This document shows, piece by piece, positions 2,887-64,000 of a stretch of 64,000 nt of DNA. Within the stretch, counting starts at the first letter, position 1; each line of letters opens with the position of its first letter. The translations under genes were made by a program, and so were the position numbers. Below the pieces are notes generated by a model. That model did not search any database. It was not told the origin of the DNA and saw only the letters and a list, made by a program, of their open reading frames with translations. This stretch comes from Thalia democratica (taxonomy: Eukaryota). The stretch is taken from the NCBI GenBank assembly GCA_965202585.1, contig OZ241832.1, positions 53,444,001 through 53,508,000 on the forward strand, written 5' to 3'.

Positions 2887-3025
2887 TTTAAATTATATTA
2901 TTAAGTGTTAACAGATTTTAGAAAGCTTTTTAATAAAGTGTATTTTAAAGCGTAATTAGCTTATAAACTGTTTAATGATAAAAAAAAGTTAATAAAAAAA
3001 CTTAAATGTTGTTGTAACTGTATAC

Positions 3026-3357
3026 CAAGGTTTCCCAAATGTGGGTCAAATGACCACCTTGGGGGCCATAATTCTAAAAAGATCATAAAGTAAGCATGAC
3101 TAGTTTAGGGTCCAAAAGGGAGCAAAATATTGAAATTTATGGATATTCTTGAGTTGATAACGAAAAGCAAAAAAAAAGTTTCATTCATAATTAAGGGTAG
3201 AGTAAAAACTTCCACTAGATAATTTGGAGTTGATGATGAAGAGCAAAAGGAAAAACAAAGGTCTTAGGCGTATTTAAAGGTTATTTTTTGAGAAAACTTA
3301 TTAAAGGGATCATTGTTTTTTAATTACGTAAAAGTGAGCCTTGTTTGGAAAAACCAG
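3026..3357 (+). mobile_element. Non-autonomous hAT (Buster/Charlie-type) MITE
   Basis: Left end CAAGGTTTCCCAAA, right end TTTGGAAAAACCAG, both degenerate versions of the TIR of the 4745-10145 element. Flanks CTGTATAC / CTCTATAT are a 6/8-matching 8-bp TSD with central TA. Confidence 0.65.
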
Positions 3358-3409
3358 CTCTATATTTACGGGTAGCAGTCAAATTTGCACCAGCGTACAA
3401 AACTGTAAG

Positions 3410-4010
3410 AGTTAATCGGGACAAAATTGCACGAAGACACTTTTGCACGAGCAGAAAATTTTGCACGGAGACACTTTTGCACGGGTTGAAATTTTTTTAA
3501 TTTTTATTTGAATATAACAAACTCAAGTGCAAGAGTTTATTTTGTTAGCTACAGCTGTTTCGAAGGACAATACTATCGTTCTTTTCAGGAGTCAACAAAA
3601 TAGTGGCAAGCACTTTTTAAGCAAATAATGTAAGTAATAAATGAGTTTTATAATTTAAACATTTTTTTTACTTTCACTGCTACCCCTAACCCTTACCCTC
3701 GGTCTGTAGCTTTTTGTTTGCTATTTAACTATCTTTCTTTTTTTTTCTTATTACTTATGTTTTTTATACTATCACTGTTACCTAACCCTTACCCTCGGTT
3801 GTTAACTTGTTTTTTCTTTTTGTTATTTTATTGATTTATCTTTCTTTTTTTTTGTCTATTTATTTACTCTCGTAGAAAAATGAACCTTTGTGAAAAATTG
3901 ACTCGTGTAAATTTTTCTATGTGCAATTTTGTCTTCTTGCAATTTAGTCGCCTCGTGCAATTTAGTTACCTTTAGCAATTTTTTCTTTGTGCAATTTTGG
4001 CCCGTTCCAA
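3410..4010. mobile_element. TIR element with 16-18-bp subterminal repeats, superfamily unassigned
   Basis: Left CGGGACAAAATTGCAC followed by TTTTGCACG repeats; right end has GTGCAATTT repeats ending GTGCAATTTTGGCCCG (inverted). Two internal copies of CACTGYTACC..TAACCCTTACCCTCGGT. Confidence 0.55.
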
Positions 4011-4044
4011 AATTAAACGTATATAGTTTAAATTTATTTAATTT

Positions 4045-4310
4045 TTTCAATTTTTGGACACTACAGGCGCTAAAGAGTGTTAATATTTCAAAATTATCTG
4101 TTAGGAGGGCAAAATCAAGTATAAAAACACTATAAGCTAAAAAAAAAGGGATTTTTTAATCTAAAGAGTTGAAACAAATATTTTTTTATATTTTAAAAAA
4201 TTGTATACATTTCTGCAGATTTTCTAAAAACGTACTAAACTACGTGTCTGCTGAAGACTAACATATAATAATTAACTGTAATATAGTTAAGTACTGTTAT
4301 AGTTTTGAAA
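4045..4310 (+). repeat. Dispersed ~270-bp repeat, second copy at 24380-24657
   Basis: Colinear shared blocks GACACTACARGCGCTAAA, TGTATACRTTTCTGCAGA, AACTACGTG and ATATAGTTAAGTWCTGTTATAGTTTT in both copies. Confidence 0.75.
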
Positions 4311-6873
4311 AAATACCTTTTCCATATATACATATATAATATACTTTAAAGTATAAAGGCTACTTAAAAATAAAAAAATATATACAAAGAAAAGATGTAA
4401 GAAAACATGATCTCACCTAATGTTTTTAAGTTTTTTAAAAATAGCTGACCCTGTTAGAATTATAAATATTAAAATAAATATACAGTAAAATCAAAATTAC
4501 CGACTAAAATATTGATATTTTTTAGATAACAGCATAATGTAACTAGTTTTAGCATCTACATTTGTATATATATCCATAAAAATTTACATAAATTTAAACT
4601 TACAGAGTAATAAATTTTTGTAATTTTTTGATGTAAAACTAGAGTAAAAAATACTAGAAATGTAAAGAAAATGCTTCTAGCAAGAACATTAAAGCCATAA
4701 AATTTATAAGGAGTTTATGTATTTATCATATGTTTAGTTTAGATCAGGGTTTCCCAAAGTGGGCCAAGTGGCCCCCTTGGGGGCCATTTGAGCAAGTCAG
4801 GGGGCCATAAGCCGTAAAGGGGCCAAAGGGGGGGCCATGACTAGAAAAGGGGCCATAAGGGAGCCTTTTCAATTTTTTGCCGTCTTTGAAAATTACGTAA
4901 ATTTTTGCAACAGCAATTTTAGAATTTTAGTTTTTGGCCCTGAGTTTAGATTTAAAATCCACTTTGTGTAAGTTTATTCTAGAAATAGCTTTAGTGCTTA
5001 GGTCAGATAACTCAATGTAAAGTTCAATCTTTTGCCAATTTTATTTACAGTATATGTTTACTTTACAGTTTCAACCAATTAAATTATGAAATTTACAGTC
5101 TAAAGATGTTGCTTAAAACAAAGTTAAACATCAGCTGCTCAGTTTTTAAGTAATTTAAAACAGTTCAGTTTTATAAGGTAATGTGAATTATTAGATTATT
5201 AGCTTATCTTATATAGAGAGATAGTTATTTGTGTATCAAAACTGCAACTCCTACTTGATTCAACATGCCAACCAGGCAATCTCATCAAATGTATTTCAAG
5301 TATGTTTTCATATATTTATACTCATGTTTTAGCAAACAATATTTTATTAAAACTAGTTGTATTTAAAGTTATTTTTAATTTACAATATGATGAATCAGCA
5401 AAAAAAAAAGTTGTTTTTCATGTTATTTTTTATTTTATTTATTAAAGCTTTATTCTTTGATTAATTTCTAATATGTATGGGTTAAGTGGGATAGGGATAA
5501 GGGTAAAAAAACAATAAAGCTTTAAAAAAGTGTATCGATTCTGTAAATATGCATATCAGACTGACCTTTAAGTATACTATTCATTAAATTTTAAATTGTA
5601 AGTTCTTAGAATTTTTAATAACTAACATAAAACATAACTTTTCAAAATTCAATAATGTAAACAACTTTTTTTTTAAATGTAGATTCTTACTTAAATTAAT
5701 ATAGATTTTTTTTTTATGGTTGACCCTATAAGTTATAAAATTGTAACTTTCTAGCATACTGCTAGTAAAACTATTATATTTTTATAAATAAATGTTGTTT
5801 ACGTTGGTTTAACTTTTATTTTAGGCCAAGCCACATTTAAAAATTAATTTTTAGTTACCTTAAAAATTAAGTAGTATGGTACCATTCTTAACTACCACTC
5901 TTATTAAATATTTCCAATAAACTCTGACTAACTCTTTTTTTGGTTAGTATGAACCATTTATTATTCTTACACATGTTGCCTTGAGCTTATTTTTTGTACA
6001 ATTTAAACTTAAGATAATTAAGACTTAAAAAAAAAGTCAAAAGTTGTTTACAAAATTAATGGTGTGAAGTTCATTACCAAAATGTTTTTCTCCACACTAA
6101 TCCATTGACCTTAGTTGTAAGTGTTTACATTTTTCTTTCTTACTAATCTTCATCTATTTTTTAAATCTTTACAATAAACTTTGTATATACTTGTTAGTAA
6201 TGTTAAAAGTGCTAATAACCTATTTTATCTATTACCAGTTATAAATGAGATTTTTTTCAAATTATTTAAAGTATATTTGAAATAATATAATAAAAAAAAC
6301 TTAATAATATTTGAAAAGGTTTAAATTTTTTATCACTGAAACCTTGTAAAAAATATAAGAGTTTATTTTCACCTTTTTTTATTTAATTAATCTCTTTACT
6401 TTACAGTAAATTTGAGCAATATTTTAAAGTTTAGTCAAATAAGTATATACATTTTTTTTAAACAAGTCATATGGTGAAATTGAATGTTTTTTAATTACTT
6501 CTCAGTTTACTTACATTACACTTAACATTTTACATACAGGGTTGCTAAATACTTGGTACACTCAGAATAAATCAGGATATTTTGAAACTTTTGAAAATCT
6601 AAGAATGACTCAGGACAGCTTAGGATAACTCAGGGTTTTTTCTAACTCAGACTGACTTAGGATAAGTTTAAATAGAATAATAGACTGAACTATTATTTTG
6701 AATTATTGAAAAAGATTTAAGATGCCATTCTCAAATTATAATATTTTTTGGAAAAGTAAAGTTGCTCTTGTAAACTTATAAATTACCCATGGATTGCTCT
6801 TTTTATTCTTCATACAAAATTGTTTAAAACTTTTCAAGATATGGCTAAAATAAATTTTAAATTATAGTATTTT

Positions 6874-8451
6874 TTGAAAATAGTTAAAAAAAAAGAACCA
6901 GACCCAAATAACAAGTATGTTCAAAAGAAGTGTACACAAAACATTGATGACGGTGTATTATTTTTATATTACCTGTCTTTAATAATTGCAAAACAAGGGT
7001 TACCTCACACCATTGGGGAAAAAGCATTTATTCCAGCCATAAGAACAGTACTTGAAAAAGTTCTACATATCAAAAACATCAGCAATGTTCTACGCATAAT
7101 CCCATTGAGTAACAACACAGTTAAACGACGCATTGATGAAATGGGAGAATGTGTAGAAAAAAAACTAATTACATTGATGTGTACCAACTTATTTTCCATA
7201 CAAGTTGACGAGTCTACCTACTTTGTCTGGAAATAAGTGTCTACTTCTTTTATGTGTACGAATGGTAGTTGGTGACAAAACCTATGAAGAATTAGCTATA
7301 TCTCAGCTAATGGAAACCCACAGCACAGGCCAACTTGTTTTTAATAAGATCAAAAACTATTTTGAATCTAATAAAATACCTTTAGAAAACATCATAGGTA
7401 TTGCAACAGATGGTGCTCCCTCCTGGTTGGTAGGCATGTTGGATTAATCACGTTTTTTAAAAAGGTTAATCCTAATTAATTTACAATTCATTGTGTATTC
7501 CATAGGCAACATTTAGTTGCTAAAAAATTAAGTAATCATCTACACACCTCATTGAATTTAGTTATTAAAGCTGTGAACAAAATTAAAAGACATGGTTTGC
7601 AAACTCGTTTGTTTAAAGAGCTTTGCAATGTCAATGAGGAGGAGTTTTACAACTTAATCATACACACTGAAGTCCGATGGTTATCAAAAGGAAACTGCTT
7701 GGAAAGGTTCTTAGCAGTTTTTGATACAGTAATTGAATTTTTTTCTACAAAAAACAGTGAGTTATCAATTAAACTGCAAGAAAGAAAAATTGACATAGCA
7801 TACTTGTCTGACCTCTAAGGAAAATTTAATGTTCTGAACAAACTCCTACAAGGAAAAAATTTAAATATCATAAAAGTCAAGGCTAGTCTAACCAGCTTTA
7901 CAAACAAACTGGAACTGTTTGAAAGAAACTTTAAAAAAGATCAATTCTGCCAGTTTTCAAGCTTAGAAAACTTAAAACATCAGCTAAGTAAAGATGAGGT
8001 AGAAATTTATACATCCCACTTAAAAGAGCTAAAACTTGATATAGTTCACAGATTTAAAGATATATTTCAATTAAATGTTCCAAATTGGATAGTAAGCCCC
8101 TTTGAAGCAAGTCTTGATGAAGTAAAAGTTGAATTACAAGAAAAGTTCATCGAACTAGTTGCTGGTCCTGAGCTTAAAGTAAAGTTTTTGCGATTTGGGT
8201 ATGAAAGTTTTTGGTTGCAAGAAAAAGTTAGACAAGAATATCCAGATATTTGGGAGGAAATAAGTCTTTTATTCATTGCATTTCCTTCTAGCTATGTAGT
8301 TGAAAAAGCTTTTAGCTCAGTTATAAATGTCTTAAATAAAAGATCAAACTTAGACATATCCAAAGGAGGAGACTTGAGGTTGTATCTAACTGAATTAAAA
8401 CCTAACATAGAGAAGTTAGCCAGTAGTCATCAAGCTCATCCTTCACATTGA
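6874..8451 (+). pseudogene. Disrupted Buster/Charlie hAT transposase (ZBED5/FAM200/SCAND3-like family)
   Basis: Motifs IIAKQGLPHTIGE, FSIQVDES (D), ATDGAP (D), HCVFHRQHL, TEVRWLSKGNCLERF, FPSSYVVEKAFS (E) and terminal QAHPSH*. At least two frameshifts (~7220, ~7420) and two in-frame stops (~7477, 7816); no BED finger found upstream. Confidence 0.92.
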
Positions 8452-29397: not shown

Positions 29398-30857
29398 AGC
29401 ATTTTTAGGAATTTTATAAAAAGTCCAAACTTAAGACCCAATTATTTTCCTTATCTTAATAGCTAATTAAAACTTTTTCCAGAGAACGGTTCTTTGTATT
29501 GAATTTTAAAAAAACCATTGAATTGGGGTTTGACTTTTTGAGTGGGCCCAGTTAAATTTTGTGTTTTTTCTATTTTTTTATTTATACAACCTTTTCTTTA
29601 ATAATAATTTTTTTTTCTTATTTTTTTTTTCTAACATACGTATTTAAATGAGTTTAATGATGTTGTAAATTTTTTTAATTTATTTTTTCAATTTTTTTTT
29701 ATACCATAAGACTGAATAAACTTTTCAGAAAAATTCAGTTTTGTATGATTTTTGTTTTTCAGATAATACAACCTTTTATGAAAAAATAAAATATAAGTGA
29801 TATTTTTTCCCAGTTTATTGTTGCTTTTAAAATATATGCCCCATACAAGTTTTACCTAAACTCTTAGCAATGCTATTTGAGGGATTTCTTGAGGGCTCAA
29901 GTGCTAAAAGTCTAGGTAAAACTTGTATAGGTCATATATTTTAAAGGAAATAATAAACTGGGAAAAAATATCACAACATCATAAAACCTAACTATACAAA
30001 TCTGTTAAAAATAAAAGTTATTAAGAAAATATTTTATTTTTGCATAAAAGGTTGTATACCTGAAAAACGAAAGTCATGCAAAACTGTAATTTTTCTTAAA
30101 AGTTTATTCAGCAGGGTTGCCACTTTACCTGGAAACCTGGAAAAACCTTAAAAAACCTGGAATTCGACAATTTAGGCAAAAATAACCTTGAAAAACCTGG
30201 AATTTGAGAAATTTTGAAAAAAAAATATGGAAAAACCTGGAAATTTGATCATAAAACCTGGAACTTACAATAATTTTAACATTATCATTAGTAAATTTCG
30301 ATTTGACACAAAAAATCTATCATATTAATAAGATTTTTTTGTCATTATCAAAAAAAATTTTTATTATAAAACACAATTAAAGTAACTTCACACTATCTTT
30401 TCAATGTTTCTATACTACTTAATGCAGTTTCTTATATAGAAATTAATCTAAAACCAAAAATAAATCCTAAAATGTGTACTTTTAAAAACCTGGAAAAAAA
30501 ATTGAAAAAACGACTGGCAACCCTGATTCAGGCTAATAGTATAAAAAAAAAATGAAACAAATGAATTTAAAAAAACTTTACAACATCATTAAACCCATTT
30601 TAATACATGTGTTTAAAAAAATATTAAAAAAAAAATATTTTTGGAGAAAAGGTTGTACAAATAAAAAAATAAAAAAACACAAAATTTTGAAATGGGCCCC
30701 ACTCTAAAATTCAAACCCCAATTCAATGGATTTTTTTTAATTAAAGACAAAGGACTGTTCTCTAGGATAAAAAGAAAAGCTTTCAATTAGCTATTAAGAT
30801 AATGAAAATAATTGGGTCTTAAGGTTGGACATTTTTATAAAATTCCTAAAAAACGCT
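29398..30857. mobile_element. Foldback (near-whole-length palindromic) element, ~1040 bp without the nested MITE
   Basis: 29398-29869 is the reverse complement of 29902-30111 plus 30526-30857 (e.g. CTTAAGACCCAATTATTTTC vs GAAAATAATTGGGTCTTAAG; GTTTTACCTAAACTCTTAGCA vs TGCTAAAAGTCTAGGTAAAAC). Loop of ~31 nt centred near 29885. Confidence 0.85.
30112..30525 (+). mobile_element. 414-bp hAT-like MITE with a 6-bp TSD, inserted in the foldback arm
   Basis: TIRs CAGGGTTGCCA / TGGCAACCCTG. ATTCAG at 30106-30111 and 30526-30531. Many AACCTGG subterminal repeats. Confidence 0.88.
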
Positions 30858-30927: not shown

Positions 30928-33900
30928 TTAGAAGATTAAGACTAGTAAGCAGAATTGTTATTTATACTGACTGACTTAAGCGAGTAAAATAATTTTTGTA
31001 AAGACAGTAAATCTAGATTATTTGTATTTTTTTTATGAAATAGACCTTTCATTAAACTTCAATTGTTATCATATCCCTACTTCTCCTCACTCACAGTTTA
31101 ACAATAAGGTTATGAATGAGGGTATAAGTCTAAAATTTATATTAGGTTCAATAGAACTATGGACACTTTATTCAATTAATGTGCTTTATGTGCATTATTA
31201 GCTCTCAAAAATTATTTTGCTCACTAAGAATTGGTAGGTAAAATTACTTCTTGTATAAGTATTGTTTAGTTCTACAATAATCACTCTTACTCAGACAAAG
31301 CGAGTAACAGGTTGTACAGTGAGTAGCATGTTTAATTTAGTAATCAGAACTGTCATACATACTATCTAACTTGAGCTAGTGAAAATAATAAAATAATCAT
31401 GTAAAAGTTGAATATTTTTACAAAACTTCCAAAATAATTCTAGGTCAAAATTTTTAAATTGAGAACATGTATACTTTTGCTTAAGTTTAACAACTAGTTT
31501 TCCTAACATTAGCTAAGTACTCATATTTATCTTATAAAAATTCTGTTTTTTTTTTTTGTAATCTGTGTAAGTTTAATTATCTTGATATCTAAATGTGTTC
31601 ATCCATAGGTAGCTCAAAAATTTGTTAGGTATAAAAAAAATAGGGTGTTAGGATATTTTAAAGAGGTACCCAAAAATGTTGCTTAGTTTATATTTAGTTC
31701 AATTTCAAAAACTCAAGACAATAAAGCTTTTTTGAAAGTTTACTCAAGACTGCCACACACTCAGAATAATTTAAATTTCATTCCTAAACTCATCGTGACT
31801 AAAATTAGCTTTATTATTTTATGAAAAATTTAGGATATTTTTTGATTGTTTTACTAATGTCAGGACATATTTTTTATATATTTTCAAAGATATTTATTTT
31901 ATTTGGTTTTGATAAACTTTTTATATTTTATACAAATTTTATATAACTTTTAACCAAAATTATAACTATTATTTTTTTACGACTTTGTTGAAAATGTTTT
32001 ATTTTATATATTTTAAAAAGTAAAAAAAAAAATAAAGGTTTAAAAAACTCAGGACTGTTTTTTTTTTTTTTTGAGGCAAAGATTATAAATTTTTATAACT
32101 TGTTTACTAATTTTAAGGTTATCTAAAAACTTTAGTAAACTCAGGCCAAACCAGGATAGTTTAATACAGGGTTGCGACTCTTTTAGACTACTATAATTTT
32201 TTTTTTTGTAAAATTCTGACTAGTTTGGATGTAATTGCTGAATCTTAGGCTCTATTTTAAAATTTTAAATGATATTATTCCTTTAGAAATTGTGCTTTAT
32301 TAACTCATTTTTTGTATAAATACTTAATAATGCCAAAATAATAAAGTATTTATACAAAAAATAATCATTTTTTGGTCATATTGAAAATTCAGCGTTGCAA
32401 CTTTACCTGGAATCCTGTAAAAACCTAGAGTTTGACAACTTAAGCAAAAAGAACTGGAAAAACCTGGATTATGGGATTTTGAAAAAGTCCTGAAAAAACC
32501 TGGAACTTCAAATAAAAATCACTTAAAAAACCTGGAATTTTAAGGATTTTCACATGTTCAGTAGTGAAACTTCAAATTGTCTCAAAAAATCTATCATATA
32601 AATAAAAACACTTTGTAATTATCAAAAAATTTATTTCATTAAAAAATATATTTGAAATAGCTTTACAGTATCTTTTTAATGTTATTATGCTATTTAACAC
32701 AGTTTCTTACCATAAACTTACTTTAAACTAAAAATAGGCCTAAAAATGTGTACTTCTAAAAACCTGGAAGAAATTTGGAAAACCTGCAAAATTTTTGAAA
32801 CCCTTAGATTCACTTTTTTCTTTTACAAAGACTAGCTTAGTGTAATTTAAGCTAGTTTTTAGTCACTAATGCTGGCTTTTTGCCTTTAAAAGTAGAAACT
32901 CTGTTAGAATAACTTTGCTCATTCATTACTTCTTGGGTTAGAAGATTAAGACTAGTAAGCAGAATTGTTATTTATACTGACTGACTTAAGCGAGTAAAAT
33001 AATTTTTGTAAAGACAGTAAATCTAGATTATTTGTATTTGTTTTTATGAAATAAACCTTTTATTAAACTTCAATTGTTATCATATCCCTACTTCTCCTCA
33101 CTCACAGTTTAGCAATAAGGTTATGAATGAAGGTATAAGTCTAAAATTTATATTAGGTTCAATAGAACTATGGACATTTTATTCAATTAATGTGCTTTAT
33201 GTGCATTATTAGCTCTCAAAAATTATTTTGCTCACTAAGAATTAGGTAGGTAAAATTACTTCTTGTATAAGTATTGTTTAGTTCTACAATAATCACTCTT
33301 ACTCAGACAAAGCTGGTAACAGGATCTACAGTGAGTAGCATGTTTAATTTAGTAATCAGAACTGTCATACATACTATCTAACTTGAGCTAGTGAAAATAA
33401 TAAAATAATCATGTAAAAGTTGAATATTTTTACAAAACTTCCAAAATAATTCTAGGTCAAAATTTTTAAATTGAGAACATGTATACTTTTGCTTAAGTTT
33501 AACAACTAGTTTTCCTAACATTAGCTAAGTACTCATATTTATCTTATAAAAATTCTGTTTTTTTTTTTTGTAATCTGTGTAAGTTTAATTATCTTGATAT
33601 CTAAATGTGTTCATCCATAGGTAGCTCAAAAATTTGTTAGGTATAAAAAAAATAGGGTGTTAGGATATTTTAAAGAGGTACCCAAAAATGTTGCTTAGTT
33701 TATATTTAGTTTAATTTCAAAAACTCAAGACAATTAAGCTTTTTTGAAAGTTTACTCAAGACTGCCACACACTCAGAATAATTTAAATTTCATTCCTAAA
33801 CTCATCGTGACTAAAATTAGCTTTATTATTTTATGAAAAATTTAGGATATTTTTTGATTGTTTTACTAATGTCAGGACATATTTTTTATATATTTTCAAA

Positions 33901-34950
33901 GATATTTATTTTATTTGGTTTTGATAAACTTTTTATATTTTATACAAATTTTATATAACTTTTAACCAAAATTATAACTATTATTTTTTTACGACTTTGT
34001 TGAAAATGTTTTATTTTATATATTTTAAAAAGTAAAAAAAAAAATAAAGGTTTAAAAAACTCAGGACTGTTTTTTTTTTTTTTTGAGGCAAAGATTATAA
34101 ATTTTTATAACTTGTTTACTAATTTTAAGGTTATCTAAAAACTTTAGTAAACTCAGGCCAAACCAGGATAGTTTAATACAGGGTTGCGACTCTTTTAGAC
34201 TACTATAATTTTTTTTTTTGTAAAATTCTGACTAGTTTGGATGTAATTGCTGAATCTTAGGCTCTATTTTAAAATTTTAAATGATATTATTCCTTTAGAA
34301 ATTGTGCTTTATTAACTCATTTTTTGTATAAATACTTAATAATGCCAAAATAATAAAGTATTTATACAAAAAATAATCATTTTTTGGTCATATTGAAAAT
34401 TCAGCGTTGCAACTTTACCTGGAATCCTGTAAAAACCTAGAGTTTGACAACTTAAGCAAAAAGAACTGGAAAAACCTGGATTATGGGATTTTGAAAAAGT
34501 CCTGAAAAAACCTGGAACTTCAAATAAAAATCACTTAAAAAACCTGGAATTTTAAGGATTTTCACATGTTCAGTAGTGAAACTTCAAATTGTCTCAAAAA
34601 ATCTATCATATAAATAAAAACACTTTGTAATTATCAAAAAATTTATTTCATTAAAAAATATATTTGAAATAGCTTTACAGTATCTTTTTAATGTTATTAT
34701 GCTATTTAACACAGTTTCTTACCATAAACTTACTTTAAACTAAAAATAGGCCTAAAAATGTGTACTTCTAAAAACCTGGAAGAAATTTGGAAAACCTGCA
34801 AAATTTTTGAAACCCTTAGATTCACTTTTTTCTTTTACAAAGACTAGCTTAGTGTAATTTAAGCTAGTTTTTAGTCACTAATACTGGCTTTTTGCCTTTA
34901 AAAGTAGAAACTCTGTTAGAATAACTTTGCTCATTCATTACTTCTTGGGT
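30928..34950 (+). repeat. Tandem duplication of a ~2.01-kb unit (30928-32937 and 32938-34950)
   Basis: Near-identical text at offset 2010, rising to 2012 after two 1-bp indels. Each unit contains a decayed copy of the 30112 MITE family (starting ~32391 and ~34403). Confidence 0.95.
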
Positions 34951-35894
34951 AAGAAAACTTCTTATCTGAGTACAGTTTGGTTCTACTATATATTTTTTTC
35001 CCTATAAAACAAAATAAGACTTATAGTTTATTATTGAAAAGGCTTAATAAAGTTAAGCTTAATAAGCAGGATTGCCAAACACATGAGCTAACTTAAGCTA
35101 ATCAAAATACTAATTAAAATTAATTAAAAAACTAAAGTCGGGCTAGATTAAACTTTACATAGGTTTTCGTTTATGAAAGAACTTAATAGGCTAATTAAAA
35201 TTTAAAAACTAGTTTGTTGTATTAAAAACTAATTTACTTTTTTATTTAAATACAGTTAATTTTCTAAATTTTATTTCATTTAAGGCAAAGCTAGTAACAT
35301 GACTTATGATCAACATATAAAAAAAAATGCTATCGTGTTAACGGTCACCACCTGCCCCATCTAACTTGCAACTTTTCAGAGTTAAAAATTGTGAAAAATT
35401 TATGTTTTGACTTTATAGAAATTTGTCTAATAAACAATATTTAAAACATGGAAGTAAAATGTTATTTTTTATAAATTTGTTCAATGGATTTTTATTTCAT
35501 ACATTTTTTCAAAAAAGAAAATTATATGTACTGTTTAAGATGTATCAATAAGTTTGTAGGTTAACTTATGCATAAGGCTTTTTTTATCCTTACAGACTAT
35601 GTTTAAGTTTTTAGAATTATATGTAAATTCTTGTAATATAGTTTTGATAATTTTAAGTTTATATAAATATGAATTTATTATACTTAGTTGATATATTTAT
35701 TCTTTCAAAAATTTATTTTGCAAACTAAGTTTCGGTCAAAGACCTCGTCAGTGCTTAAATAAATCTTATTCAAATAGAACCTATTTGAATCTTTTACTTA
35801 CTTAGTTTCTATCTTTAACCTTTTTATATAGTTTTTTAAATTAAAAAATATAAAGCTTTAAAACCTTTCAGATTTTTAATTTTAACTAAATCAG

Positions 35895-56800: not shown

Positions 56801-59800
56801 GTTGACTAGAAAAAATAATTGCAATGTAGCAACAGTATAGTCAAAAACTAATACTTTAATGAAAATTGTTCAACAGCTGTCACAGCAAGACCACTACGAT
56901 TTCGGCATGCGAGCAGTCAAGTCGGTGCTGGTGATGGCTGGAACTCTCAAGCGTGAAAATCCCGACATTCACGAAGAAGCCACCCTCATCAGGGCTCTTC
57001 GCGACTCCAACCTGCCCAAGTTCCTTTCACAGGTTAGTATTATTATTTCTATGTTAAAGTTTGTAATAAAATTTTCGTAAGATCCAAAGGTTATTTGTAA
57101 ACTTGATATACAACTTTAAAGTTGAACGTTTTTAGGATGCACTCTTATTCGGAGGTATTTTGAGCGACTTGTTCCCAGGAGTAGACATTCCTGAACATGA
57201 CTACGGAGTTTTTGAACAAACTATCAAAGATGTCATGCTCAGAAATAAACTCAAACCTGTTTCTGTGCTTGTTAAAAAAGTAGGCATAATAAAAATGTTA
57301 TTTTTATACATGCCACAAATATAAAGCTTTTAAACTTTCACACAACTTATATAATAACTCTTTTAACGTGCAATCAAACTGAAGGTGATACAATTGTACG
57401 AGACGATGCTGGTGCGTCACGGCTTGATGCTGGTGGGACCGACCGGCGGCGGAAAGACCGTTTGCTACCAGATGCTGGCGCAAGTGCTCGAGATGCTCAA
57501 GATCAAGGGCCATCAGAACCCCGAGTACAAGCCGGTGAAGACGACCGTCATGAACCCCAAGTCCATCACCATGGGCGAGCTGTACGGCGAGGAAGACCCG
57601 AATACCATGGAGTGGAAAGACGGTTTGATGGCAATCAGCGTCCGGCAAGCTGTTCTGGTATGTGTTTTGTATTAACATTATATGAGTTATAGACCTTAAT
57701 GGAATTCATTTGTTTTACTTTTGTATTAGTTATTATTTTATTAGTTTATTATTTGAATAATTTTATAAATACTGAACTACAATGTAGAAAATCATCTAAA
57801 ACAATGATTTTCATACAGTATATTTCATACACAAACCAGTAATATATTTTACAAATGCACTGACAACTGTGACTTGCAACAGCAAACAAAGGATTCATCG
57901 AGTGATCATCAATGGATAATTTGCGATGGTCCCGTAGACGCGCTGTGGATAGAAAACATGAACACAGTACTCGACGACAACAAGATGCTCTGCCTCGCCA
58001 ACAGTGAGAGAATTAAGCTGGCTGAAACGATCCACATGGTTTTTGAAGTGCAGGTGATTTAAAAATAACGACTAATAAAAATAACGTTCAATAATGAGTA
58101 TAGTAATTTTGCTCTCATAAAACTTTTGAAACTCATTTAACTTAAAACAAATATTAAGATTTTAAAACATCCATATAGGATTTAGCAGTTGCCTCTCCTG
58201 CAACAGTTTCTAGATGTGGTATGGTTTACATTGATCCGCCAGATCTCGGATGGAGACCAATAGTCGGTACCTGGCTAGACACGAAGATGGCCCAGCACAT
58301 GACGGTTACTACTAAGAATTTCATCAGTGATTTGTTCGATGCTTATGTTGAGGACGGAATTAGGTAGATCATTATCAACTAAACTTATTTATTATAAGCT
58401 TTTTTTTCTATGATTAAATTGTATAAATATGCTTCATTTTACAATAAACATAAAAAATTACTATTTTATAAAAAGTTTAGTGTATGACTTATAAAAAACG
58501 TTTAGAATTTTTTTCTGTTTCAACAGATATGTCGAGAAAAAGCTCATACAGACCATGGTCCAAGTTCCAATAAGCAAAGTTAAAACTTTGTGTAAATTGT
58601 TGGAATCGCTGCTACTTGGAAATAATGCACCTGATCTTAAAATGGTTTGCACTTTTTACTGGTAAACTAAATAACTCTACGTATATATATATACATATAT
58701 ATATATATCTACGAATAAATTAATTTTTTTCACACTGAGCCCACCTTCAGGGCTTTATTAATAAAAAAGTTTATTTCAAGATGCAAAACTCAAAGGACTC
58801 GAGTTTCGTGCCTATGCACCCATCAGCTTCAAAACAAGTTTAAAATAAAGCACAAAACAAAATCACGAATGAAAGTTAAAAATTTTTTGCATAAATAGAT
58901 TATGACGTAATTTTGAAACTATCAAAAATCATGCAAAACAGCTTGTGCAAAAATTAATTTACCAATCGACAATAAACTGGCAAAAATTCATAAAATTTAG
59001 TGAGTAAATATATATTAGGACAGATAATTGAAAGAGATAAAGATAAAATTAAGATACAAATTGAAATTTAGATTATTTTAAGATGAAATTAAAACTTGTT
59101 GAACTTTAAAAGCGACTTTTTTATATGTCTACAAGACGATACAAACTCGCTTCTTTTATTTAGGCATCTCTTGTCTTTCAGTGCATATACAACGGCTGAT
59201 GCTTCTTTGAGACACAGCCTACATATTGGGCTATTACCGTCAGCTATAGGCTGTGCTCTTTTTATAACTTCCCAGGATATTTCAAAGTCAATGCCGCTGC
59301 GCTTTAAGCCACAAACATACTTCAAAAAGTTCAGTGTCATTCTTATATATGCCGCCTCTAAAAGATTTTTTATGGTTGGCATACCTAAATCTAAACTGAG
59401 TCGAGCACAAGCCATACATAATATACATAGAAATATATTCAGTTAATTAACTTAATAAATTAAATCTTTCACACTGAGCCCACCTTATAGGCTTTTTTAA
59501 TGCTTTATTTCAAGATATAAAACATGAAGAACTCGAGTTTCGTGCCTATGCACTCATCAACTTCAAAACAAGTTCAAAATAAAGCACAAGAATAAACTTT
59601 TCTTGGAACAACTGTTTCTGCGTTCAACACGCTTCCTCAGCCAAGTATTTTATACAATTAAAGGCAAACTTCTGAGTACAGTAACAAAATTGTAAAAAAC
59701 AGATGTTACGTAATAATAAAATAATTAATTAGTGCATTTTAAACAACATAAATAACACATAGTTTATATAAATTGTTTTCGGTAATGTAAACCAGTTTGC

Positions 59801-62800
59801 AGTTCATTTTTTTGTTAAGAGATTCTGATTTTTTAATGTTTAAAATTTCTATTTTATCCGCGTTGCATAGTTTACATCCATTTTTTTAAACTATATTTTT
59901 TTTTCGTTCTTGTTAATTTCTCAGTAAATTTTAAAGTTAACTCTGTTATTTTTTAGTTTCCAAATATACTGTGATAAAGTTGTCGCATTATTGTTTTTCA
60001 TGGCTGTACCTGTGTTTTGTGTAGCGATCTTTGAACGTTAGTCCAGTGGAGCCAATATAAAACTTGGTTTGGGTTTCAGTTTTCACGGTCGCTTTATAAA
60101 TCAGATTTTGCGTTAAACATTTACCGGACATTCTTGTTTTCTACAGTCACACTTTCGCATCTCTTTCTCTTGCGTGTAAAAACGAAGTATATTAAAAGTT
60201 ATTTGAAAATAACAAAACAAATAATTTTTTACAAAATTAAAATACATAAACGTATTTTTAAAACATGTTCATTACTCACTAAACTTTCTGTGCACAGTAG
60301 AACGAATTCTATGTACACTACTGTGTACAAGTCTACTTTTTCAAAAACATTAATTTCTTTATTTTTCTTTGATTATTTTCAATGTATTTAAAGTTCTAAT
60401 TCATACATTTTGCATTCTGCTCCAAAATTAATCTTTTTCGTCATTGAATTTTTTCAATGTCACATATCGATCAATTCTTTTTTCTTGTAAACTCAAATGA
60501 TTTTGTCGTAACAACACCTTTGTTTGTGGTAACTTTTACTTAGCTTTTTGATAATGTTGAATAGCATTTAGAAAAAGCTTTTCTTAGTATTTGTCATGTT
60601 TTGGAGTTATATACAATATTGGTTCATTCTGCTCAGAATTATTTTTAATGAAGTTTTCTCCTAGCAGAACTTTTTGTTTTATATGCTGGACTGCTTCGGC
60701 TAAACTACCATTTTCGCTCCTGACAGCTTCAATAGCGGCATTTTGTGGTTGAAGTATTTTATTAACGACTATTTTTTATTTAAAATATAATTTTTGTATT
60801 TTCTTCTTCTACTTTATACATTAGCCCTTCTGTTATATTTTAGCTAACTTTTCTTTCTACATATATTTTCTTTGCTTTAAAGAATTATAAAGCAGCTAAA
60901 GTTAAATTACAAACAGGATTATTTAACAGTTTTTTGTTGAAAATTTTGTGGTACGGATGCGTTAATCCAACGTTTCTCCGAACAATTTCCAAGACAAGTT
61001 TACACGTTAATGTCTTTACCGACAAATAAAATGGTTGCGTGAAGTATAGGAGTTTTCCTTTTCCTTTTTGTTTTTTTTTCCTTTGCCAGCATTATACTTC
61101 AACTATTTCGATATTTTCTACGTTACAAAGTCTGCAACCAAATTTAGCATTAAACTTTGATTTTGTTTTGCAAAGTATTTCCATTTTATTTTAAAATCTG
61201 TATTGCTGTCTTTTAAATCTCAAATATAATTTGCAAGTTCTGCTGTATGTCTTTTATTTATATTTTTAAATGAAAGTTTATAATATCTATATCTTTCTGT
61301 TAATCTGTTTCCTATAGAAACTGTTTTCTTTGAAACTGTTTCAAATTTCCCTTTGATATATATAAGTTTAGTTACACAAAAGTTAACTATTGCCTTGGAC
61401 AGCCATTTTCAGCGTTCTAAAAGCTTTTTTTTCAGGTGTTTTATTCAATTAAAAACAAACTTGAAAACAAAAACAAGATTATATATTTACGTAGTAATAG
61501 CATATGTATTTATATATTTATATATATATATAATTTATTAGAAAAATAAGATTTTAAAAATACTGGTACAAGTGTTTCATAAGACTAGACGCCTTAATCT
61601 TCATCCAGCTAAATTTAAAATAAAAAGCACTTTGCTAAACATAGAAGCAAAAGTTATACAAAAAACAGTATGACGTAATAATTTGCATTATAAGAATTCA
61701 GTACAAAAATCGATCTATTACCTAACTTTCAAACAACTAAAATTAACAAAAAAAACAATTAAGTGACTATAAAATACATCTTCAAAATTAAGTGAAATGA
61801 AAATATATTGTATTTTAAGAGGAGCTTTTTCATATGTCGACAAGACGATATAAATTCACTCCTCTTATTTAAACAACCTTCCTTTTTAACGCATATATAT
61901 ATTTTTAACGCATATATATATATATATATAATAAGGTTATTATTCAAACTTGAACACCTTCTACAGAGCCCACTTGAATGACTTTAATAATTTATTGGAA
62001 AAGTACGATTTAAAAAATACTTGTACATATGTTTCATAAAGCTCAACGCTTAAAATAACGCAACAACTAAAATTCACAAAAATACTATTAATTGACTTTG
62101 AAATATTTCAAAATTTATTGTATTTTTGTATTATAGGTCGACAAGACAATGTAAATTCATTCCTCTTATTTAAGCAACCTTCTTTTTCAACGCATACACA
62201 ACGGCCGTTGATTTTTTTAAGCACATCCTACAAACAGGGTTATTACCATCTGCTATTGACTGTGCTCTTTTTATCATCTCCCAGGTTATTTTGAAATCAA
62301 TGTTTTTGCGTTTTAGGTTACAAACATACTTTGAAATCTCAGTCTCATTTTCATATGCACCACCTTTTAAAGATTTTTTAATGGTTAGCATACCGAAATC
62401 TGAACTGAGTTGAGCATAAGCCGATGTAGAACTTCTTCTCAAGGTCAGAGTTAACTGTTGCCTTGTAAGTAATGTTCTCCGAACGGCAATTGCCCCTTTC
62501 TAATTATGTTTGCATCCACCAGCACAAATGCATTGGTTCAGGATTAGATTACTTTTATATAATATTTTATGATTGTTGGAAATATCCTTTTAATGATTTT
62601 CACTGTTCTCATTTTTTGATCTTGGTTGAAGAAGAACGTTTTACACCTTTTTGTCTCTATCAGTTGGTGAACCTTCTAGTACACTAAAGTCGTATACACC
62701 GCTTTATTGATTGTCGATATATTTTTAATAATTAAATTTGACTTTTTGAAAATGTTGCGTGTTTTCAACCACTTCTTATTTATAGAGGCTTCGTCTTTCA

Positions 62801-64000
62801 CTTTGAAATAAGTTTCATGTAAAGCAATGTTTATAAATAGTAGAATACTTTAATACACTTATTTTTAGTTGTTTTGGGTTTTTATGCAGCCTTATTGTTT
62901 TCAATACCCAGTTTATAACTACAAAAAGTTTTTTATTCATTAGAGTTCAGGTCTTATTTTTCAATACTTACAGGTTGATATTTTGAAGAACTTCCTGAAA
63001 ATTAGAGACTACTGCCTTAAGTATAAAGTGATTTTTTAAGCTTGATATTTTTTTAACAGATAGTCGTAAAGCTCCCTTCGTTTTACTAGTAGGCTAATTT
63101 TATTTATCTTTCACATCTTCTTTTCTCGTACTTGAAAAAGTTTAAAGATTTAAATAAATTTATTTATAATCAGTTTTAAACATACAAAGCAAAAATAAAG
63201 GTGAAATGTTTCAACGTTTTTACCTTTTCAAAATGATTTATATTCTAATTACAGTTTTGAGTTAAAACTTTGTGCTTTGAAAATTTTGTTTCCTATCATC
63301 TATTTATCTTACTACGACTTTTATGTGTAGTAAATTCTTTCTTACATGATTAAAAAAAAATCTCTACAACTGTTGAACTGTAAAATCTTGTTTGTATTAA
63401 AATGGCTAACAATAATCAGTTTAAAAGTGCAAACATTTTACAGGAAGGACAAAAGTTGCACCAGCTAATAGGAATGGCCTTCATATTCTCATACACATGG
63501 GCAATCGCTGGCAACATAGATGAGAGTTGCTACGACGAATTCGACACATTTCTCAGAGCGCTCGTGGAAGACTGCAATGACCTTAAGGTTTGTACTTGAA
63601 TCTAACTCCACTTTAATTTATGTGTGAAAAATATAACTTCTTTTGTACTATCATTGCATATTGTAAGTAAAATAATATTTTTATCAGTTTAAACTAAGTT
63701 GTTTGCAAATCACTAGTTTACTTCAGTTGAAAACATAATGCAATAATTAATTTTAGTATTCTTCATTTTTTTTAAAATAATGTAGTAGTTTCATGTACTT
63801 TAAAAAACAGACACCAAACAACGGAGATGTATTCAGTCACGTGGTTGATTTTGAATCAAAGAGATACGAACTGTGGGACAGATACGTTGCAAAGTTCGTG
63901 TATGACAAGAAGCAGCCCTTCTTCGAAATTCTGGTGCCCACCGTTGACACCACCAGGTTCGGATTTCTCATGGACAAGCTCCTGGACGTCGGACAATCTG
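41859..64000 (+). CDS. DNAH6: Axonemal inner-arm dynein heavy chain, DNAH6-like; 5' part (tail, linker, AAA1, AAA2, start of AAA3), continuing past the window
   Basis: 40 exons, all GT-AG and phase-consistent: 41859-41958, 46517-46674, 46987-47172, 47587-47876, 48323-48520, 48686-48830, 48926-49119, 49256-49370, 49632-49732, 50060-50189, 50259-50310, 50497-50620, 50765-50939, 51186-51313, 51384-51528, 51735-51989, 52142-52291, 52457-52585, 53011-53166, 53228-53329, 53387-53502, 53698-53950, 54131-54250, 54310-54473, 54545-54719, 54793-54937, 54997-55338, 55442-55611, 55752-55955, 56098-56243, 56318-56443, 56512-56755, 56877-57032, 57136-57279, 57385-57657, 57883-58053, 58179-58363, 58527-58644, 63444-63587, 63811-end. 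Motifs: [14 protein letters not shown] (AAA1 Walker A), CFDEFNRI-type Walker B (here CCDEFNRI), GPTGGGKT (AAA2), [35 protein letters not shown] and [10 protein letters not shown] match DNAH6 as recalled. Exons 1-4 and the exon 21/22 junction are less certain. Confidence 0.88.
43271..43961. mobile_element. Non-autonomous TIR element, Kolobok-like, with internal palindrome (in dynein intron 1)
   Basis: GCATAGGGGGGGT / ACCCCCCCTATGC inverted ends. The right end finishes ...GCTC followed by TTAA; the left flank is degenerate. Internal inverted pair CACTAAAAA..ATCAATCTTCTTCTTCATTTTTTGA / TCAAATAATGAAGGAGGAGATTGATTTTTAGTG. Confidence 0.6.
44739..44947 (+). mobile_element. 209-bp hAT (Charlie-type) MITE
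   Basis: Ends CAAGGGTCGGCAAA and CCTGCCTACCCCTG. Perfect 8-bp TSD GTATAGAA at 44731-44738 and 44948-44955. Confidence 0.85.
45138..45477 (+). mobile_element. 340-bp hAT (Charlie-type) MITE
   Basis: Ends TAGAGGTCGGCAG and TTTGCCAACCCCTG; GCGGGCC/GGCCGC subterminal motifs; flanks TATTACAC / TATTACTA (6/8). Confidence 0.75.
58682..58709. repeat. (TA)n microsatellite; further tracts at 61511-61532 and 61893-61931
   Basis: Directly visible dinucleotide runs. Confidence 0.9.
58730..59425 (-). mobile_element. 5'-truncated Penelope-like retroelement (copy A1): GIY-YIG endonuclease C-terminal part, 3'UTR and hammerhead-bearing terminal repeat
   Basis: With one frameshift it reads [53 protein letters not shown]...CRLCLKE...[13 protein letters not shown], the typical C-terminal EN of PLEs. 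The terminal ~130 bp (58730-58860) is repeated at 59465-59590. Confidence 0.85.
58791..58831 (-). ncRNA. Minimal type I hammerhead ribozyme (core variant CUGAUGG)
   Basis: Minus strand: TGAAG CTGATGG GTGC-ATAG-GCAC GAAA C-TCGA-G TC / CTTTG. Stem I (5 bp, two G-U), stem II (4 bp), minimal stem III, GUC cleavage triplet. Confidence 0.85.
59525..59565 (-). ncRNA. Minimal type I hammerhead ribozyme (core variant UUGAUGA)
   Basis: Minus strand: TGAAG TTGATGA GTGC-ATAG-GCAC GAAA C-TCGA-G TT / CTTCA. Perfect 5-bp stem I, GUU triplet. Confidence 0.85.
59760..60170 (-). pseudogene. Penelope-like GIY-YIG endonuclease relic, subfamily B
   Basis: Across frameshifts: [49 protein letters not shown].../[13 protein letters not shown].../[13 protein letters not shown]...SLNKK. 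Confidence 0.85.
60900..61070 (-). pseudogene. Penelope-like RT-EN linker relic
   Basis: [41 protein letters not shown] resembles the PLE linker [38 protein letters not shown]. Confidence 0.7.
61090..61420 (-). pseudogene. Penelope-like GIY-YIG endonuclease relic, subfamily C
   Basis: FCVTKLIY...[71 protein letters not shown]. Confidence 0.8.
61560..61900 (-). mobile_element. Short 3' fragment of Penelope-like subfamily A (copy A3) with decayed hammerhead
   Basis: [23 protein letters not shown]; downstream relic GCTGG..ATGA..stem..GAAAC-ACTT-GTA/CCAGT. Confidence 0.7.
61960..62760 (-). mobile_element. Penelope-like subfamily A copy A2 (linker, complete EN relic, 3' end)
   Basis: QCICAGGCK.../[71 protein letters not shown]...CRMCLK. 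The 3' end has GAGCCCAC, as in the 58730 repeat. Confidence 0.85.

What the first reader, a model, noticed from the sequence alone, without database searches (positions are those of the whole stretch)
58645..63443. One intron built almost entirely from head-to-tail Penelope-like fragments of at least three subfamilies, all antisense
Seen: five GIY-YIG EN fragments (A1, B, C, A3, A2), an RT-EN linker and a terminal-repeat copy lie within 4.8 kb, every one on the minus strand. No PLE sequence was recognised elsewhere in the 64 kb. Established: PLEs form 5'-truncated partial tandems with pseudo-LTRs. Inference: repeated targeting of one site or of earlier PLE copies by divergent families, with uniform orientation from insertion mechanism or from selection against sense-strand ribozymes that would cut the dynein pre-mRNA.
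Basis: partly seen in the sequence, partly recalled or inferred. Interest (0 to 1): 0.72.

Follow-up and report, generated by a model that had tools for sequence, protein, structure and literature searches.

The report
Retroelement pile-up at a TA microsatellite
One unusually long intron of a dynein motor gene was swollen by repeated landings of small Penelope-like jumping genes in a single (TA)n microsatellite, which is published behaviour for this element group, so the locus is a clear but ordinary example.

Summary
The 4.8-kb intron (58646-63443) of a plus-strand dynein heavy-chain gene contains nine minus-strand fragments of Penelope-like elements (PLEs). They belong to at least four families, here called A, A', B and C. 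No PLE coding sequence occurs elsewhere in the 64 kb. "Almost entirely" is overstated: about 70% of the intron is PLE or (TA)n, and about 1.4 kb is single-copy.

Intact copies elsewhere in this genome are 2.55-2.67 kb with one 709-718-aa ORF. Their RT folds like telomerase RT and their C-terminal nuclease is GIY-YIG-like. They carry the motifs of the published "Hydra" PLE clade and sit between (TA)n runs.

The fragments in the intron are also joined and ended by (TA)n runs: four in 4.8 kb against one in the other 58 kb. The hotspot is therefore a TA microsatellite about 33 bp from the splice donor, hit repeatedly over a long time. This targeting is published (Craig et al. 2021), and this scan has reported it before at other loci of the same genome.

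Neighbouring copies of different families elsewhere are same-strand about as often as opposite. The uniform antisense orientation is thus not mechanistic. It is chance (about 0.4-3%, judged post hoc) or ordinary selection against sense insertions. The ribozyme-specific idea is untested.

The parts
58646..63443 (+). Intron of the dynein heavy-chain gene (GT at 58646-47, AG at 63442-43). At 4.8 kb it is far longer than its neighbours of about 120-220 bp.
   Evidence: Sequence. Flanking exon 63444-63590 matches Dynein_AAA_lid at 9e-9. The gene spans only about 21.7 kb from DHC_N2 to its C-terminal domain.
58679..58711 (.). Surviving (TA)n run, 33 bp downstream of the splice donor. It is the 3' junction of A1 and the presumed remnant of the ancestral microsatellite. 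It is bracketed by TCTACG on both sides.
   Evidence: Assembled contigs of three other runs all break here, at 58671/58672.
58712..59413 (-). A1: the 3' 0.7 kb of a family-A element. It holds EN residues about 607-713 with one frameshift, plus the full 3' tail. The tail has a hammerhead at 58790-58831 whose core reads CUGAUGG (A9 changed to G).
   Evidence: 91.6% identity over 655 bp to intact copy L019 3941-4594. blastx 99%/78%. Rfam Hammerhead_1 scores 20 bits, below the threshold. Alignment.
59414..59466 (.). AT/TA-rich spacer between the A-tail fragment and A1, read as a decayed TA run.
   Evidence: Sequence. This reading is an inference.
59467..59596 (-). Its hammerhead at 59525-59560 has the core UUGAUGA (C3 changed to U). 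It is the same tail variant as A1, sharing the helix II GUGC...GCAC and the extra 3' hairpin.
   Evidence: 85% identity to L019 4499-4585. 87-89% identity to the A1 tail (D3/D6). Alignment; regex.
59576..60177 (-). B: family-B EN (about residues 555-709, with frameshifts) plus a complete 3' tail. It abuts the A-tail fragment with no TA run between them.
   Evidence: 79-80% identity over about 615 bp to B copies in L022/L023/L029. blastx and HMM.
60178..60923 (.). Unassigned stretch with no PLE signal. It is single-copy except 60225-60332, which matches about 20 copies of a non-PLE repeat.
   Evidence: Single-copy depth. Present in a relative 7-9% diverged (X4 record 22).
60924..61085 (-). X: an isolated, old RT-EN linker fragment (profile positions 478-530) of a B/C-like element.
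   Evidence: HMM i-E 5e-8. blastx 46% to B and 37% to C. No DNA-level match.
61098..61356 (-). C-EN: an old family-C endonuclease fragment (about residues 598-685), 5'-truncated at a TA run and lacking its own 3' end.
   Evidence: 76% identity over 210 bp to L027/L028. blastx 68-71%. Near single-copy depth.
61357..61364 (.). Short (TA)4 remnant between the B-type tail and C-EN.
61373..61496 (-).
   Evidence: 72-74% identity to the last about 120 bp of B tails in L022/L023/L024.
61503..61532 (.). (TA)n run at the 3' junction of A3.
61533..61899 (-). A3: a heavily 5'-truncated A'-type copy holding the last about 34 EN residues plus the full tail.
   Evidence: 76% identity to L029 2098-2489. The best copies genome-wide are 78-85% identical. 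HMM 2.6e-6.
61894..61930 (.). (TA)n runs (61894-61902 and 61913-61930) between A2 and A3.
61931..62580 (-). A2: an A'-type copy from residue about 484 (linker) through the whole EN, with frameshifts and a shortened tail.
   Evidence: 83% identity over 525 bp to L029 1724-2247. The best copies genome-wide are 84-86% identical. blastx and HMM.
62612..62808 (-). C5': the 5' UTR plus N-terminal residues 13-69 of a C-like element, abutting A2. A 5' piece on its own implies a later deletion.
   Evidence: 72% identity to L027 5722-5924 and L028 2115-2317. blastx 49%.
62809..63443 (.). Single-copy intron sequence with no repeat or PLE signal, probably ancestral intron.
   Evidence: Only a self-match in the 802-Mb genome. 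Single-copy depth and presence in a diverged relative.

Best explanation
**What it is.** The intron originally held a (TA)n microsatellite about 33 bp downstream of its splice donor. Small single-ORF Penelope-like retroelements of the 'Hydra' clade nick (TA)n with their GIY-YIG endonuclease. They then copy their RNA into the nick by target-primed reverse transcription, usually stopping early (5' truncation).

**How the pile-up grew.** Over a long period at least six, and up to nine, insertion events landed there. They came from four or more families, with divergence from living relatives ranging from about 8% to more than 25%. Small deletions at junctions also occurred. Together these inflated a short intron to 4.8 kb.

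**Shown here:**
- the family identities of the fragments;
- TA runs at the junctions;
- the same TA-flanked structure in intact and variably truncated copies elsewhere in the genome;
- the different ages of the fragments.

**Inferred:**
- EN cleavage of (TA)n, taken from the literature and from junction anatomy;
- the order of events;
- that the uniform antisense orientation is chance or ordinary purifying selection against sense-strand insertions in an essential, compact gene.
For: **Element identity**
- Natural intact copies are 2.55-2.67 kb with one 709-718-aa ORF and lie directly between (TA)n runs.
- The AF2 model of the A ORF has pLDDT 89.8. Its best PDB matches are telomerase RTs (6zdq_A, E 3.4e-9).
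- For the EN-only model, the top four of 48,161 chains are all GIY-YIG nucleases (I-TevI Z 7.1).
- The Atlas neighbours carry HTH_animal, DUF8422, GIY-YIG and RVT_1.
- The RMRWK, DKT, YRDDG, CxC..C linker, CxxC and CxH motifs are present and CCHH is absent. This matches the description of the Hydra clade (PMC8557442, section 11).

**TA targeting**
- The 3' ends of copies elsewhere sit at family-specific fixed distances from a TA run: A 327-339 or 395-397 bp, B 183-189 bp, C 352-458 bp, A' 269-321 bp.
- Copies truncated at residues 28, 63, 96, 131 and 232 have a TA run exactly at the 5' junction.
- The intron holds four (TA)>=5 runs against one in the other 58 kb.
- The paper states that almost all Hydra-clade families insert into (TA)n.

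**Serial, independent events**
- The four families differ at 34-40% amino-acid identity.
- Identity to the nearest relatives is 91.6% (A1), 84-86% (A2), 78-85% (A3), about 80% (B) and 72-76% (C).
- Depth of reads at least 90% alike is repeat-level only over the A, A' and B parts.
- The old middle and 5' parts are present in a relative 5-9% diverged.
- No other locus carries the A2-TA-A3 arrangement.
Against: - Two junctions lack a TA run (B to A-tail at about 59576-59596, and C5' to A2 at about 62580-62612), and C-EN has lost its 3' end. Deletions or template jumps must therefore be invoked.
- No TA run survives at the 5' edge of the chain (about 62809-62880).
- About 1.4 kb of the intron is unassigned.
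- EN specificity for (TA)n was not tested biochemically, here or, as far as I know, anywhere.
- The all-minus orientation of 6-9 events has a neutral probability of about 0.4-3%, so pure chance is not comfortable.
Confidence: 0.8

Rival explanations
1. Orientation filter by selection. Insertions land in both orientations, but sense-strand copies are removed. This includes the inverted partner of head-to-head pairs. Sense copies would put a hammerhead ribozyme, polyadenylation signals or splice sites into the dynein pre-mRNA. Only antisense copies would then accumulate.
For: - All 6-9 events are antisense.
- Heterologous neighbours elsewhere are about 18 same to 16 opposite.
- Families A and C normally form head-to-head pairs, yet no partner is present here.
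- The host gene is compact with short introns.
- Antisense bias of intronic retroelements is established for other element classes (general knowledge).
Against: - This is a single locus, noticed because it looked striking, so the probability is post hoc.
- Only family A tails have a canonical hammerhead.
- Minimal PLE hammerheads are thought to need dimerisation.
- No genome-wide count could be made.
Confidence: 0.3
2. Same orientation through mechanism. Several fragments were made in single events by the reverse transcriptase jumping from one PLE RNA to the 3' end of another (heterologous pseudo-LTR formation). There would then be fewer independent events, and head-to-tail order would be automatic.
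For: - The complete 3' end of B is fused directly to the truncated A-tail fragment with no TA run.
- PLEs are known to form partial tandems (PMC3846280; PMC8557442).
- Intact A copies in L020 carry an upstream tail with no TA run between.
- L029 and L009 show other same-strand chains of different families.
Against: - Most junctions in the intron do have TA runs: A2|A3, A3|B-tail, B-tail|C-EN and A-tail|A1.
- The fragments differ widely in age.
- Heterologous neighbours elsewhere show no same-strand excess.
Confidence: 0.15
3. One rearranged element, or a segmental duplication of a pre-assembled block.
For: A2 and A3 share homologous segments, as do A1 and the A-tail fragment.
Against: - The families are only 34-40% identical in protein.
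- Each fragment matches a different family of intact copies.
- No other locus in 802 Mb has the A2-TA-A3 arrangement or the unique spacers.
Confidence: 0.02

Closest known systems
'Hydra' clade of Penelope-like elements (Craig, Yushenova, Rodriguez & Arkhipova 2021, Mol Biol Evol; PMC8557442)
   Same: - Elements under 3 kb with a single ORF.
- RT followed by a C-terminal GIY-YIG EN without the CCHH motif.
- RWK and DKT motifs, a Cys-rich linker, and CxxC/CxH around the conserved E and N.
- A hammerhead in the tail (family A).
- Insertion into (TA)n.
- Tandem and inverted arrays.
   Different: - The linker spacing here is CxCX3-4C, not the published CxCX5C.
- No canonical hammerhead was found in the A', B and C tails.
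- The host appears to be a marine animal, not freshwater Hydra.
- I could not compare directly with the Repbase families.
Canonical PLE partial tandems with pseudo-LTRs (Penelope/Poseidon/Neptune; e.g. PMC3846280)
   Same: 5'-truncated copies lie head-to-tail. An upstream tail copy precedes a downstream copy (A-tail + A1).
   Different: A pseudo-LTR tandem is one family made in one event. Here the chain is heterologous (four or more families, different ages) and most joints are TA runs.
Microsatellite-specific non-LTR retrotransposons of the R1 clade (Waldo, Mino, Kibi, Koshi, Dong; recalled from the literature, not checked here)
   Same: They are retroelements whose endonuclease targets a simple repeat. 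The target is regenerated, so copies stack in arrays.
   Different: They have a different RT lineage, an AP-type endonuclease and different repeat motifs.
Antisense bias of intronic retroelements (LINEs/LTRs in mammals and flies; general knowledge)
   Same: Intronic copies are antisense to the host gene.
   Different: That bias is a genome-wide statistic. Here it rests on one locus, and it has not been shown for PLEs.

Membership tests
Penelope-like elements, 'Hydra' clade | Reverse transcriptase of the PLE/TERT lineage | tested here: met
   The AF2 model of a natural intact A ORF (pLDDT 89.8) has telomerase RTs as its best PDB matches (E 3.4e-9 to 1e-7), followed by DRT, LINE-1 and R2 RTs. 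YRDDG is invariant in 44 homologues. The Pfam copy held here found nothing.
Penelope-like elements, 'Hydra' clade | C-terminal GIY-YIG endonuclease | tested here: met
   For the EN-only model, ranks 1-4 of 48,161 chains are I-TevI (Z 7.1, 90 of 92 residues), T4 EndoII, PD-T4-3 and the UvrC GIY-YIG domain. The support is moderate, because the model has pLDDT 61. The Atlas neighbours carry PF01541. The domain sits at the C-terminus.
Penelope-like elements, 'Hydra' clade | EN lacks the CCHH motif; Cys-rich linker; CxxC and CxH flanking the conserved E and N; RWK present; DKG replaced by DKT | tested here: met
   Alignment A1 shows RMRWK, SDKT (A/A') or ADKS (B/C), CxLC..E, and LNK..E....C.H, with no CCHH. 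The linker is CxCX3-4C rather than CxCX5C, a minor departure.
Penelope-like elements, 'Hydra' clade | Short element (<3 kb) with a single ORF | tested here: met
   A is 2,551 bp between TA runs (L019 2041-4591). C is 2,669 bp (L028 2047-4715). ORFs are 709-718 aa.
Penelope-like elements, 'Hydra' clade | Hammerhead ribozyme motif in the terminal repeat or tail | tested here: inconclusive
   A canonical CUGAUGA..CGAAAC motif is in every family-A tail, and the two intron copies each have one core change. None was found by regex in the A', B and C reference tails. Rfam at E<=1 over 30 kb missed even the canonical ones, so variant cores are not excluded.
Penelope-like elements, 'Hydra' clade | Insertion into (TA)n microsatellites | tested here: met
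   TA runs lie at both ends of full-length and variably 5'-truncated copies and at fixed family-specific distances after the stop codon. The background is 0.017 (TA)>=5 runs per kb.
Penelope-like elements, 'Hydra' clade | Phylogenetic placement inside the published clade | not tested
   No Repbase or Hydra-clade reference sequences were available to the tools. Placement rests on motifs only.
Single pseudo-LTR partial tandem (one PLE insertion) | All parts belong to one family and are of the same age | tested here: not met
   There are four or more families at 34-40% amino-acid identity, and identities to relatives range from 72% to 92%.

The most novel reading that the evidence does not exclude
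Introns of this animal act as a one-way filter for hammerhead-bearing Penelope-like elements. Insertions at TA microsatellites occur on both strands. Copies whose ribozyme or termination signals would lie in the host pre-mRNA are purged, so intronic PLE stacks are systematically antisense. The purged copies would include the sense member of the usual head-to-head pairs. If true, this would be the first evidence that retroelement ribozymes impose a strand-specific cost on host genes.
Probability: 0.12. Interest if true: 0.5.

Novelty: new member of a known kind. Interest (0 to 1): 0.22.

Why it matters
The locus is a clean, readable example of how a microsatellite-targeting retroelement turns one simple repeat into a self-renewing landing pad. 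It also shows how such a pad can account for about 40% of the intron length of an otherwise compact essential gene. It adds no new mechanism. The TA specificity, the arrays, and the domain and motif set are all published for this clade, and this scan has already met the same thing at other loci of this genome. The only open point of wider interest is whether intronic PLE stacks are antisense-biased genome-wide. A routine repeat-by-gene intersection on an annotated assembly could settle that.

Tried and rejected
**Searches that gave nothing**
- Pfam scans of the fragments and of the intact ORFs gave no hit. The relevant models (PF26215, PF28514) appear only as precomputed labels on homologues.
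- A profile of four ORFs against PDB sequences gave nothing meaningful.
- Rfam at E<=1 found only the A1 hammerhead, below threshold. It missed the canonical ones in the reference copies, and its 'mir-' hits are TA palindromes.

**Tests that could not be run**
- As a result, no genome-wide or gene-wide strand-bias test was possible.

**Limits of the read layout**
- Only assembled contigs were available, and they break in the repeats.
- It could not show presence or absence of the young insertions in relatives, nor splicing across the intron.

**Ideas rejected**
- TA runs are part of the element. Rejected because variably 5'-truncated copies have TA at the truncation point.
- A2-TA-A3 is a mobile composite. 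Rejected.
- The unassigned 60178-60923 is decayed PLE coding sequence. It gives no HMM, blastx or genome protein match.
- The host is freshwater Hydra. Doubtful, because related sequence turns up in marine metagenomes.

**Caveats on method**
- The neighbour-orientation tally (about 18:16) was made by hand from hit lists and is approximate.
Natural copies served as references. The alignment tools print a consensus line by themselves, and I did not use it.

Full report
**The locus**

The window is G000:C8:53444001-53508000 of an 802-Mb, very AT-rich genome (about 26% GC). The finding spans one intron, 58646-63443 (GT...AG), of a plus-strand dynein heavy-chain gene.
- The downstream exon matches Dynein_AAA_lid.
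- DHC_N2 and Dynein_heavy exons lie on + from C8:53497723 to 53519420.
- The gene is compact: about 21.7 kb from the N2 domain to the C-terminal domain.
- Neighbouring introns are about 120-220 bp, so this 4.8-kb intron is an outlier.

**Checking the observation**

Stop-to-stop translation of the minus strand shows the endonuclease-like pieces. The Pfam copy here does not recognise them. I therefore used the genome itself for reference.

Each piece has hundreds to thousands of relatives in the genome, including copies with open frames of 709-718 aa. I fetched natural intact copies. They define four families:
- A: L019, ORF 2123-4261.
- A': L029, ORF 269-2197, 79% identical to A.
- B: L023, ORF 4439-6565 on the minus strand.
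- C: L027, ORF 5756-7909.
- B and C are 34-40% identical to A.

Three methods place every match inside 58712-62808 and on the minus strand. These were blastx of the whole window against the natural ORFs, blastn, and a profile HMM of 44 homologues against all 3,518 six-frame pieces of the window. Nothing matches in the rest of the window or in the 10 kb on either side.

The map, read 5'->3' for the elements (high to low coordinates):

| Piece | Coordinates | Note |
|---|---|---|
| C5' | 62808-62612 | 5' UTR + residues 13-69 of a C-like element |
| A2 | 62580-61931 | A'-type |
| (TA)n | 61930-61894 | |
| A3 | 61899-61533 | A'-type |
| (TA)n | 61532-61503 | |
| B-type tail | 61496-61373 | |
| (TA)4 | 61364-61357 | |
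| C-EN | 61356-61098 | |
| Linker fragment X | 61085-60924 | |
| Unassigned | 60923-60178 | 746 bp |
| B | 60177-59576 | |
| A-tail | 59596-59467 | |
| TA-rich spacer | 59466-59414 | |
| A1 | 59413-58712 | |
| (TA)n | 58711-58679 | then 33 bp to the exon |

PLE plus TA runs make up about 70% of the intron.
- Region 62809-63443 has no other copy in the genome.
- Region 60178-60923 has none except a roughly 100-bp non-PLE repeat.
- Read depth at 90% or more likeness agrees: it is at repeat level only over 58682-59651, 59846-60039 and 61398-62561.

**What the elements are**

An AlphaFold2 model of a natural intact A ORF, built with a 44-sequence alignment, is confident (pLDDT 89.8). Its best solved-structure matches are telomerase reverse transcriptases, followed by other RTs.

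A model of the C-terminal 150 residues alone is weak (pLDDT 61). Even so, its four best matches among 48,161 chains are all GIY-YIG nucleases, led by the I-TevI catalytic domain (Z 7.1). The protein-atlas neighbours carry HTH_animal, DUF8422, GIY-YIG and RVT_1.

The alignment shows these motifs:
- RMRWK;
- DKT in place of DKG;
- YRDDG;
- a CxC..C linker;
- a GIY-YIG core without CCHH;
- CxxC and CxH around the conserved E and N.

This is the motif set that Craig et al. 2021 give for their 'Hydra' clade of PLEs (PMC8557442, section 11). That clade also has a size under 3 kb, a single ORF and hammerheads. [quoted passage not shown]

Family-A tails carry a canonical minimal hammerhead, CUGAUGA-GUGA GUAA UCAC-GAAAC. 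The two intron copies share a tail variant with a compensatory helix II (GUGC...GCAC) and an extra 3' hairpin. Each has one different core change, A9 to G in A1 and C3 to U in the tail fragment, so both are decayed.

**Why this site**

The intact A copy in L019 lies exactly between (TA)19 and (TA)13, and C in L028 lies between two TA runs.

Copies of B truncated at residues 28, 63, 96, 131 and 232 each have a TA run at the truncation point. The runs are therefore target, not element.

Across the sampled loci, a (TA)>=5 run sits at a fixed, family-specific distance after the stop codon:

| Family | Distance after stop (bp) |
|---|---|
| A | 327-339 or 395-397 |
| B | 183-189 |
| C | 352-458 |
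| A' | 269-321 |

Such runs occur once in the other 58 kb of the window and four times in this intron. The intron's joints A2|A3, A3|B-tail, B-tail|C-EN and A-tail|A1, and the 3' end of A1, are all TA runs or their remnants.

The hotspot is therefore a TA microsatellite that each insertion regenerates. Heterologous stacking is common elsewhere too: at least 11 of about 29 sampled 3-10-kb loci hold copies of two or more families. At a density of roughly one EN-bearing copy per 80-100 kb, chance would give only a few per cent.

**Independent events and ages**

Identity to the nearest living relatives:

| Fragment | Identity |
|---|---|
| A1 | 91.6% |
| A-tail | 85% |
| A2 | 84-86% |
| A3 | 78-85% |
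| B | about 80% |
| C pieces | 72-76% |
| X | protein level only |

- The youngest piece lies next to the surviving TA run.
- No other locus has the A2-TA-A3 arrangement.
- Contigs from a second organism (about 0.2% different) hold the old middle and 5' parts (60087-61498 and 62471-63733).
- Contigs from a marine-metagenome relative (5-9% different) hold 60142-60961 and 62448-63900, so that part of the pile-up predates their split.
- Contigs break in the repeats, so the status of the young copies in relatives is unknown.
- Two joints without TA (B to A-tail, C5' to A2) and the missing 3' end of C-EN need junction deletions or a template jump.
- I count 6 events as a minimum and 9 as a maximum.

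**Orientation**

All fragments are antisense to the gene. In the sampled loci, adjacent copies of different families are 12 same-strand to 6 opposite. Adding cross-family neighbours read by hand from the hit lists gives about 18:16. That is no mechanistic preference.

Families A and C mostly occur as head-to-head inverted pairs, and B as tandems.

Under neutrality, 6-9 same-strand events have probability 2^-5 to 2^-8. The locus was picked because it looked striking, however, so this is weak evidence. Ordinary selection against sense insertions in a compact essential gene is plausible. The ribozyme-specific version is untested.

My planned test was PLE orientation in the introns of the 16 dynein heavy-chain genes.

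**Comparison and verdict**

The elements meet the testable defining features of the Hydra clade. The exceptions are a slightly different linker spacing, no canonical hammerhead seen in three of the four families, and clade placement by tree not tested.

The arrangement is a heterologous stack at a microsatellite target, not a single pseudo-LTR tandem and not one rearranged element.

Earlier notes of this scan on other loci of the same genome reached the same reading (PLE ends landing in one TA microsatellite). I re-derived the TA targeting on my own loci.

The host seems to be a marine animal. Its name is withheld, and I did not pursue it.

The finding is real and well explained, but it is ordinary for this element group.

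Noticed in passing
window 58673-58714: The (TA)n run next to the exon is bracketed by the same 6-mer on both sides: TCTACG-(TA)n-TCTACG on the + strand. It could be chance or a small duplication scar of an insertion event.
   Followed up: no
L019 1980-2063: The 5' end of an intact family-A copy and its mirror image form a perfect 21-bp inverted repeat around (TA)19. It looks like a head-to-head stub of only the extreme 5' end, which simple 5' truncation cannot make. The Rfam 'mir-' hits there are palindrome artefacts.
   Followed up: partly
genome-wide hit lists: The families differ in array habit. Young A and C copies are mostly head-to-head (-,+) inverted pairs 0.3-7 kb apart. B copies are mostly same-strand tandems about 1.6-2.7 kb apart.
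   Followed up: partly
L023, L027, L028, L029, L022, L026 tails: No canonical CUGANGA...CGAAAC hammerhead was found in the 3' tails of families A', B and C, unlike family A. An earlier scan note reports a variant-core hammerhead in about 1,900 PLE copies of this genome, which might be what these tails carry.
   Followed up: no
window 30112-30508, 32390-32797, 34402-34809: Three copies of a non-coding repeat, the last two 2,012 bp apart. It also lies beside PLE copies in L023 and L024. A CUGACGA...CGAAAC motif at about 35717-35751 (-) was not confirmed by Rfam at E<=0.1.
   Followed up: partly
window 58885-59413 (read-laying run X8, record 27): A 1,250-nt contig from a marine metatranscriptome matches family A and continues upstream into the coding region. 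It comes from another copy, and it suggests that family A is transcribed in wild samples.
   Followed up: no
G000, 16 dynein heavy-chain loci: Dynein heavy-chain genes in this 802-Mb, repeat-rich genome are compact, at 15-44 kb from the N2 to the C-terminal domain. This implies generally short introns in these genes.
   Followed up: no
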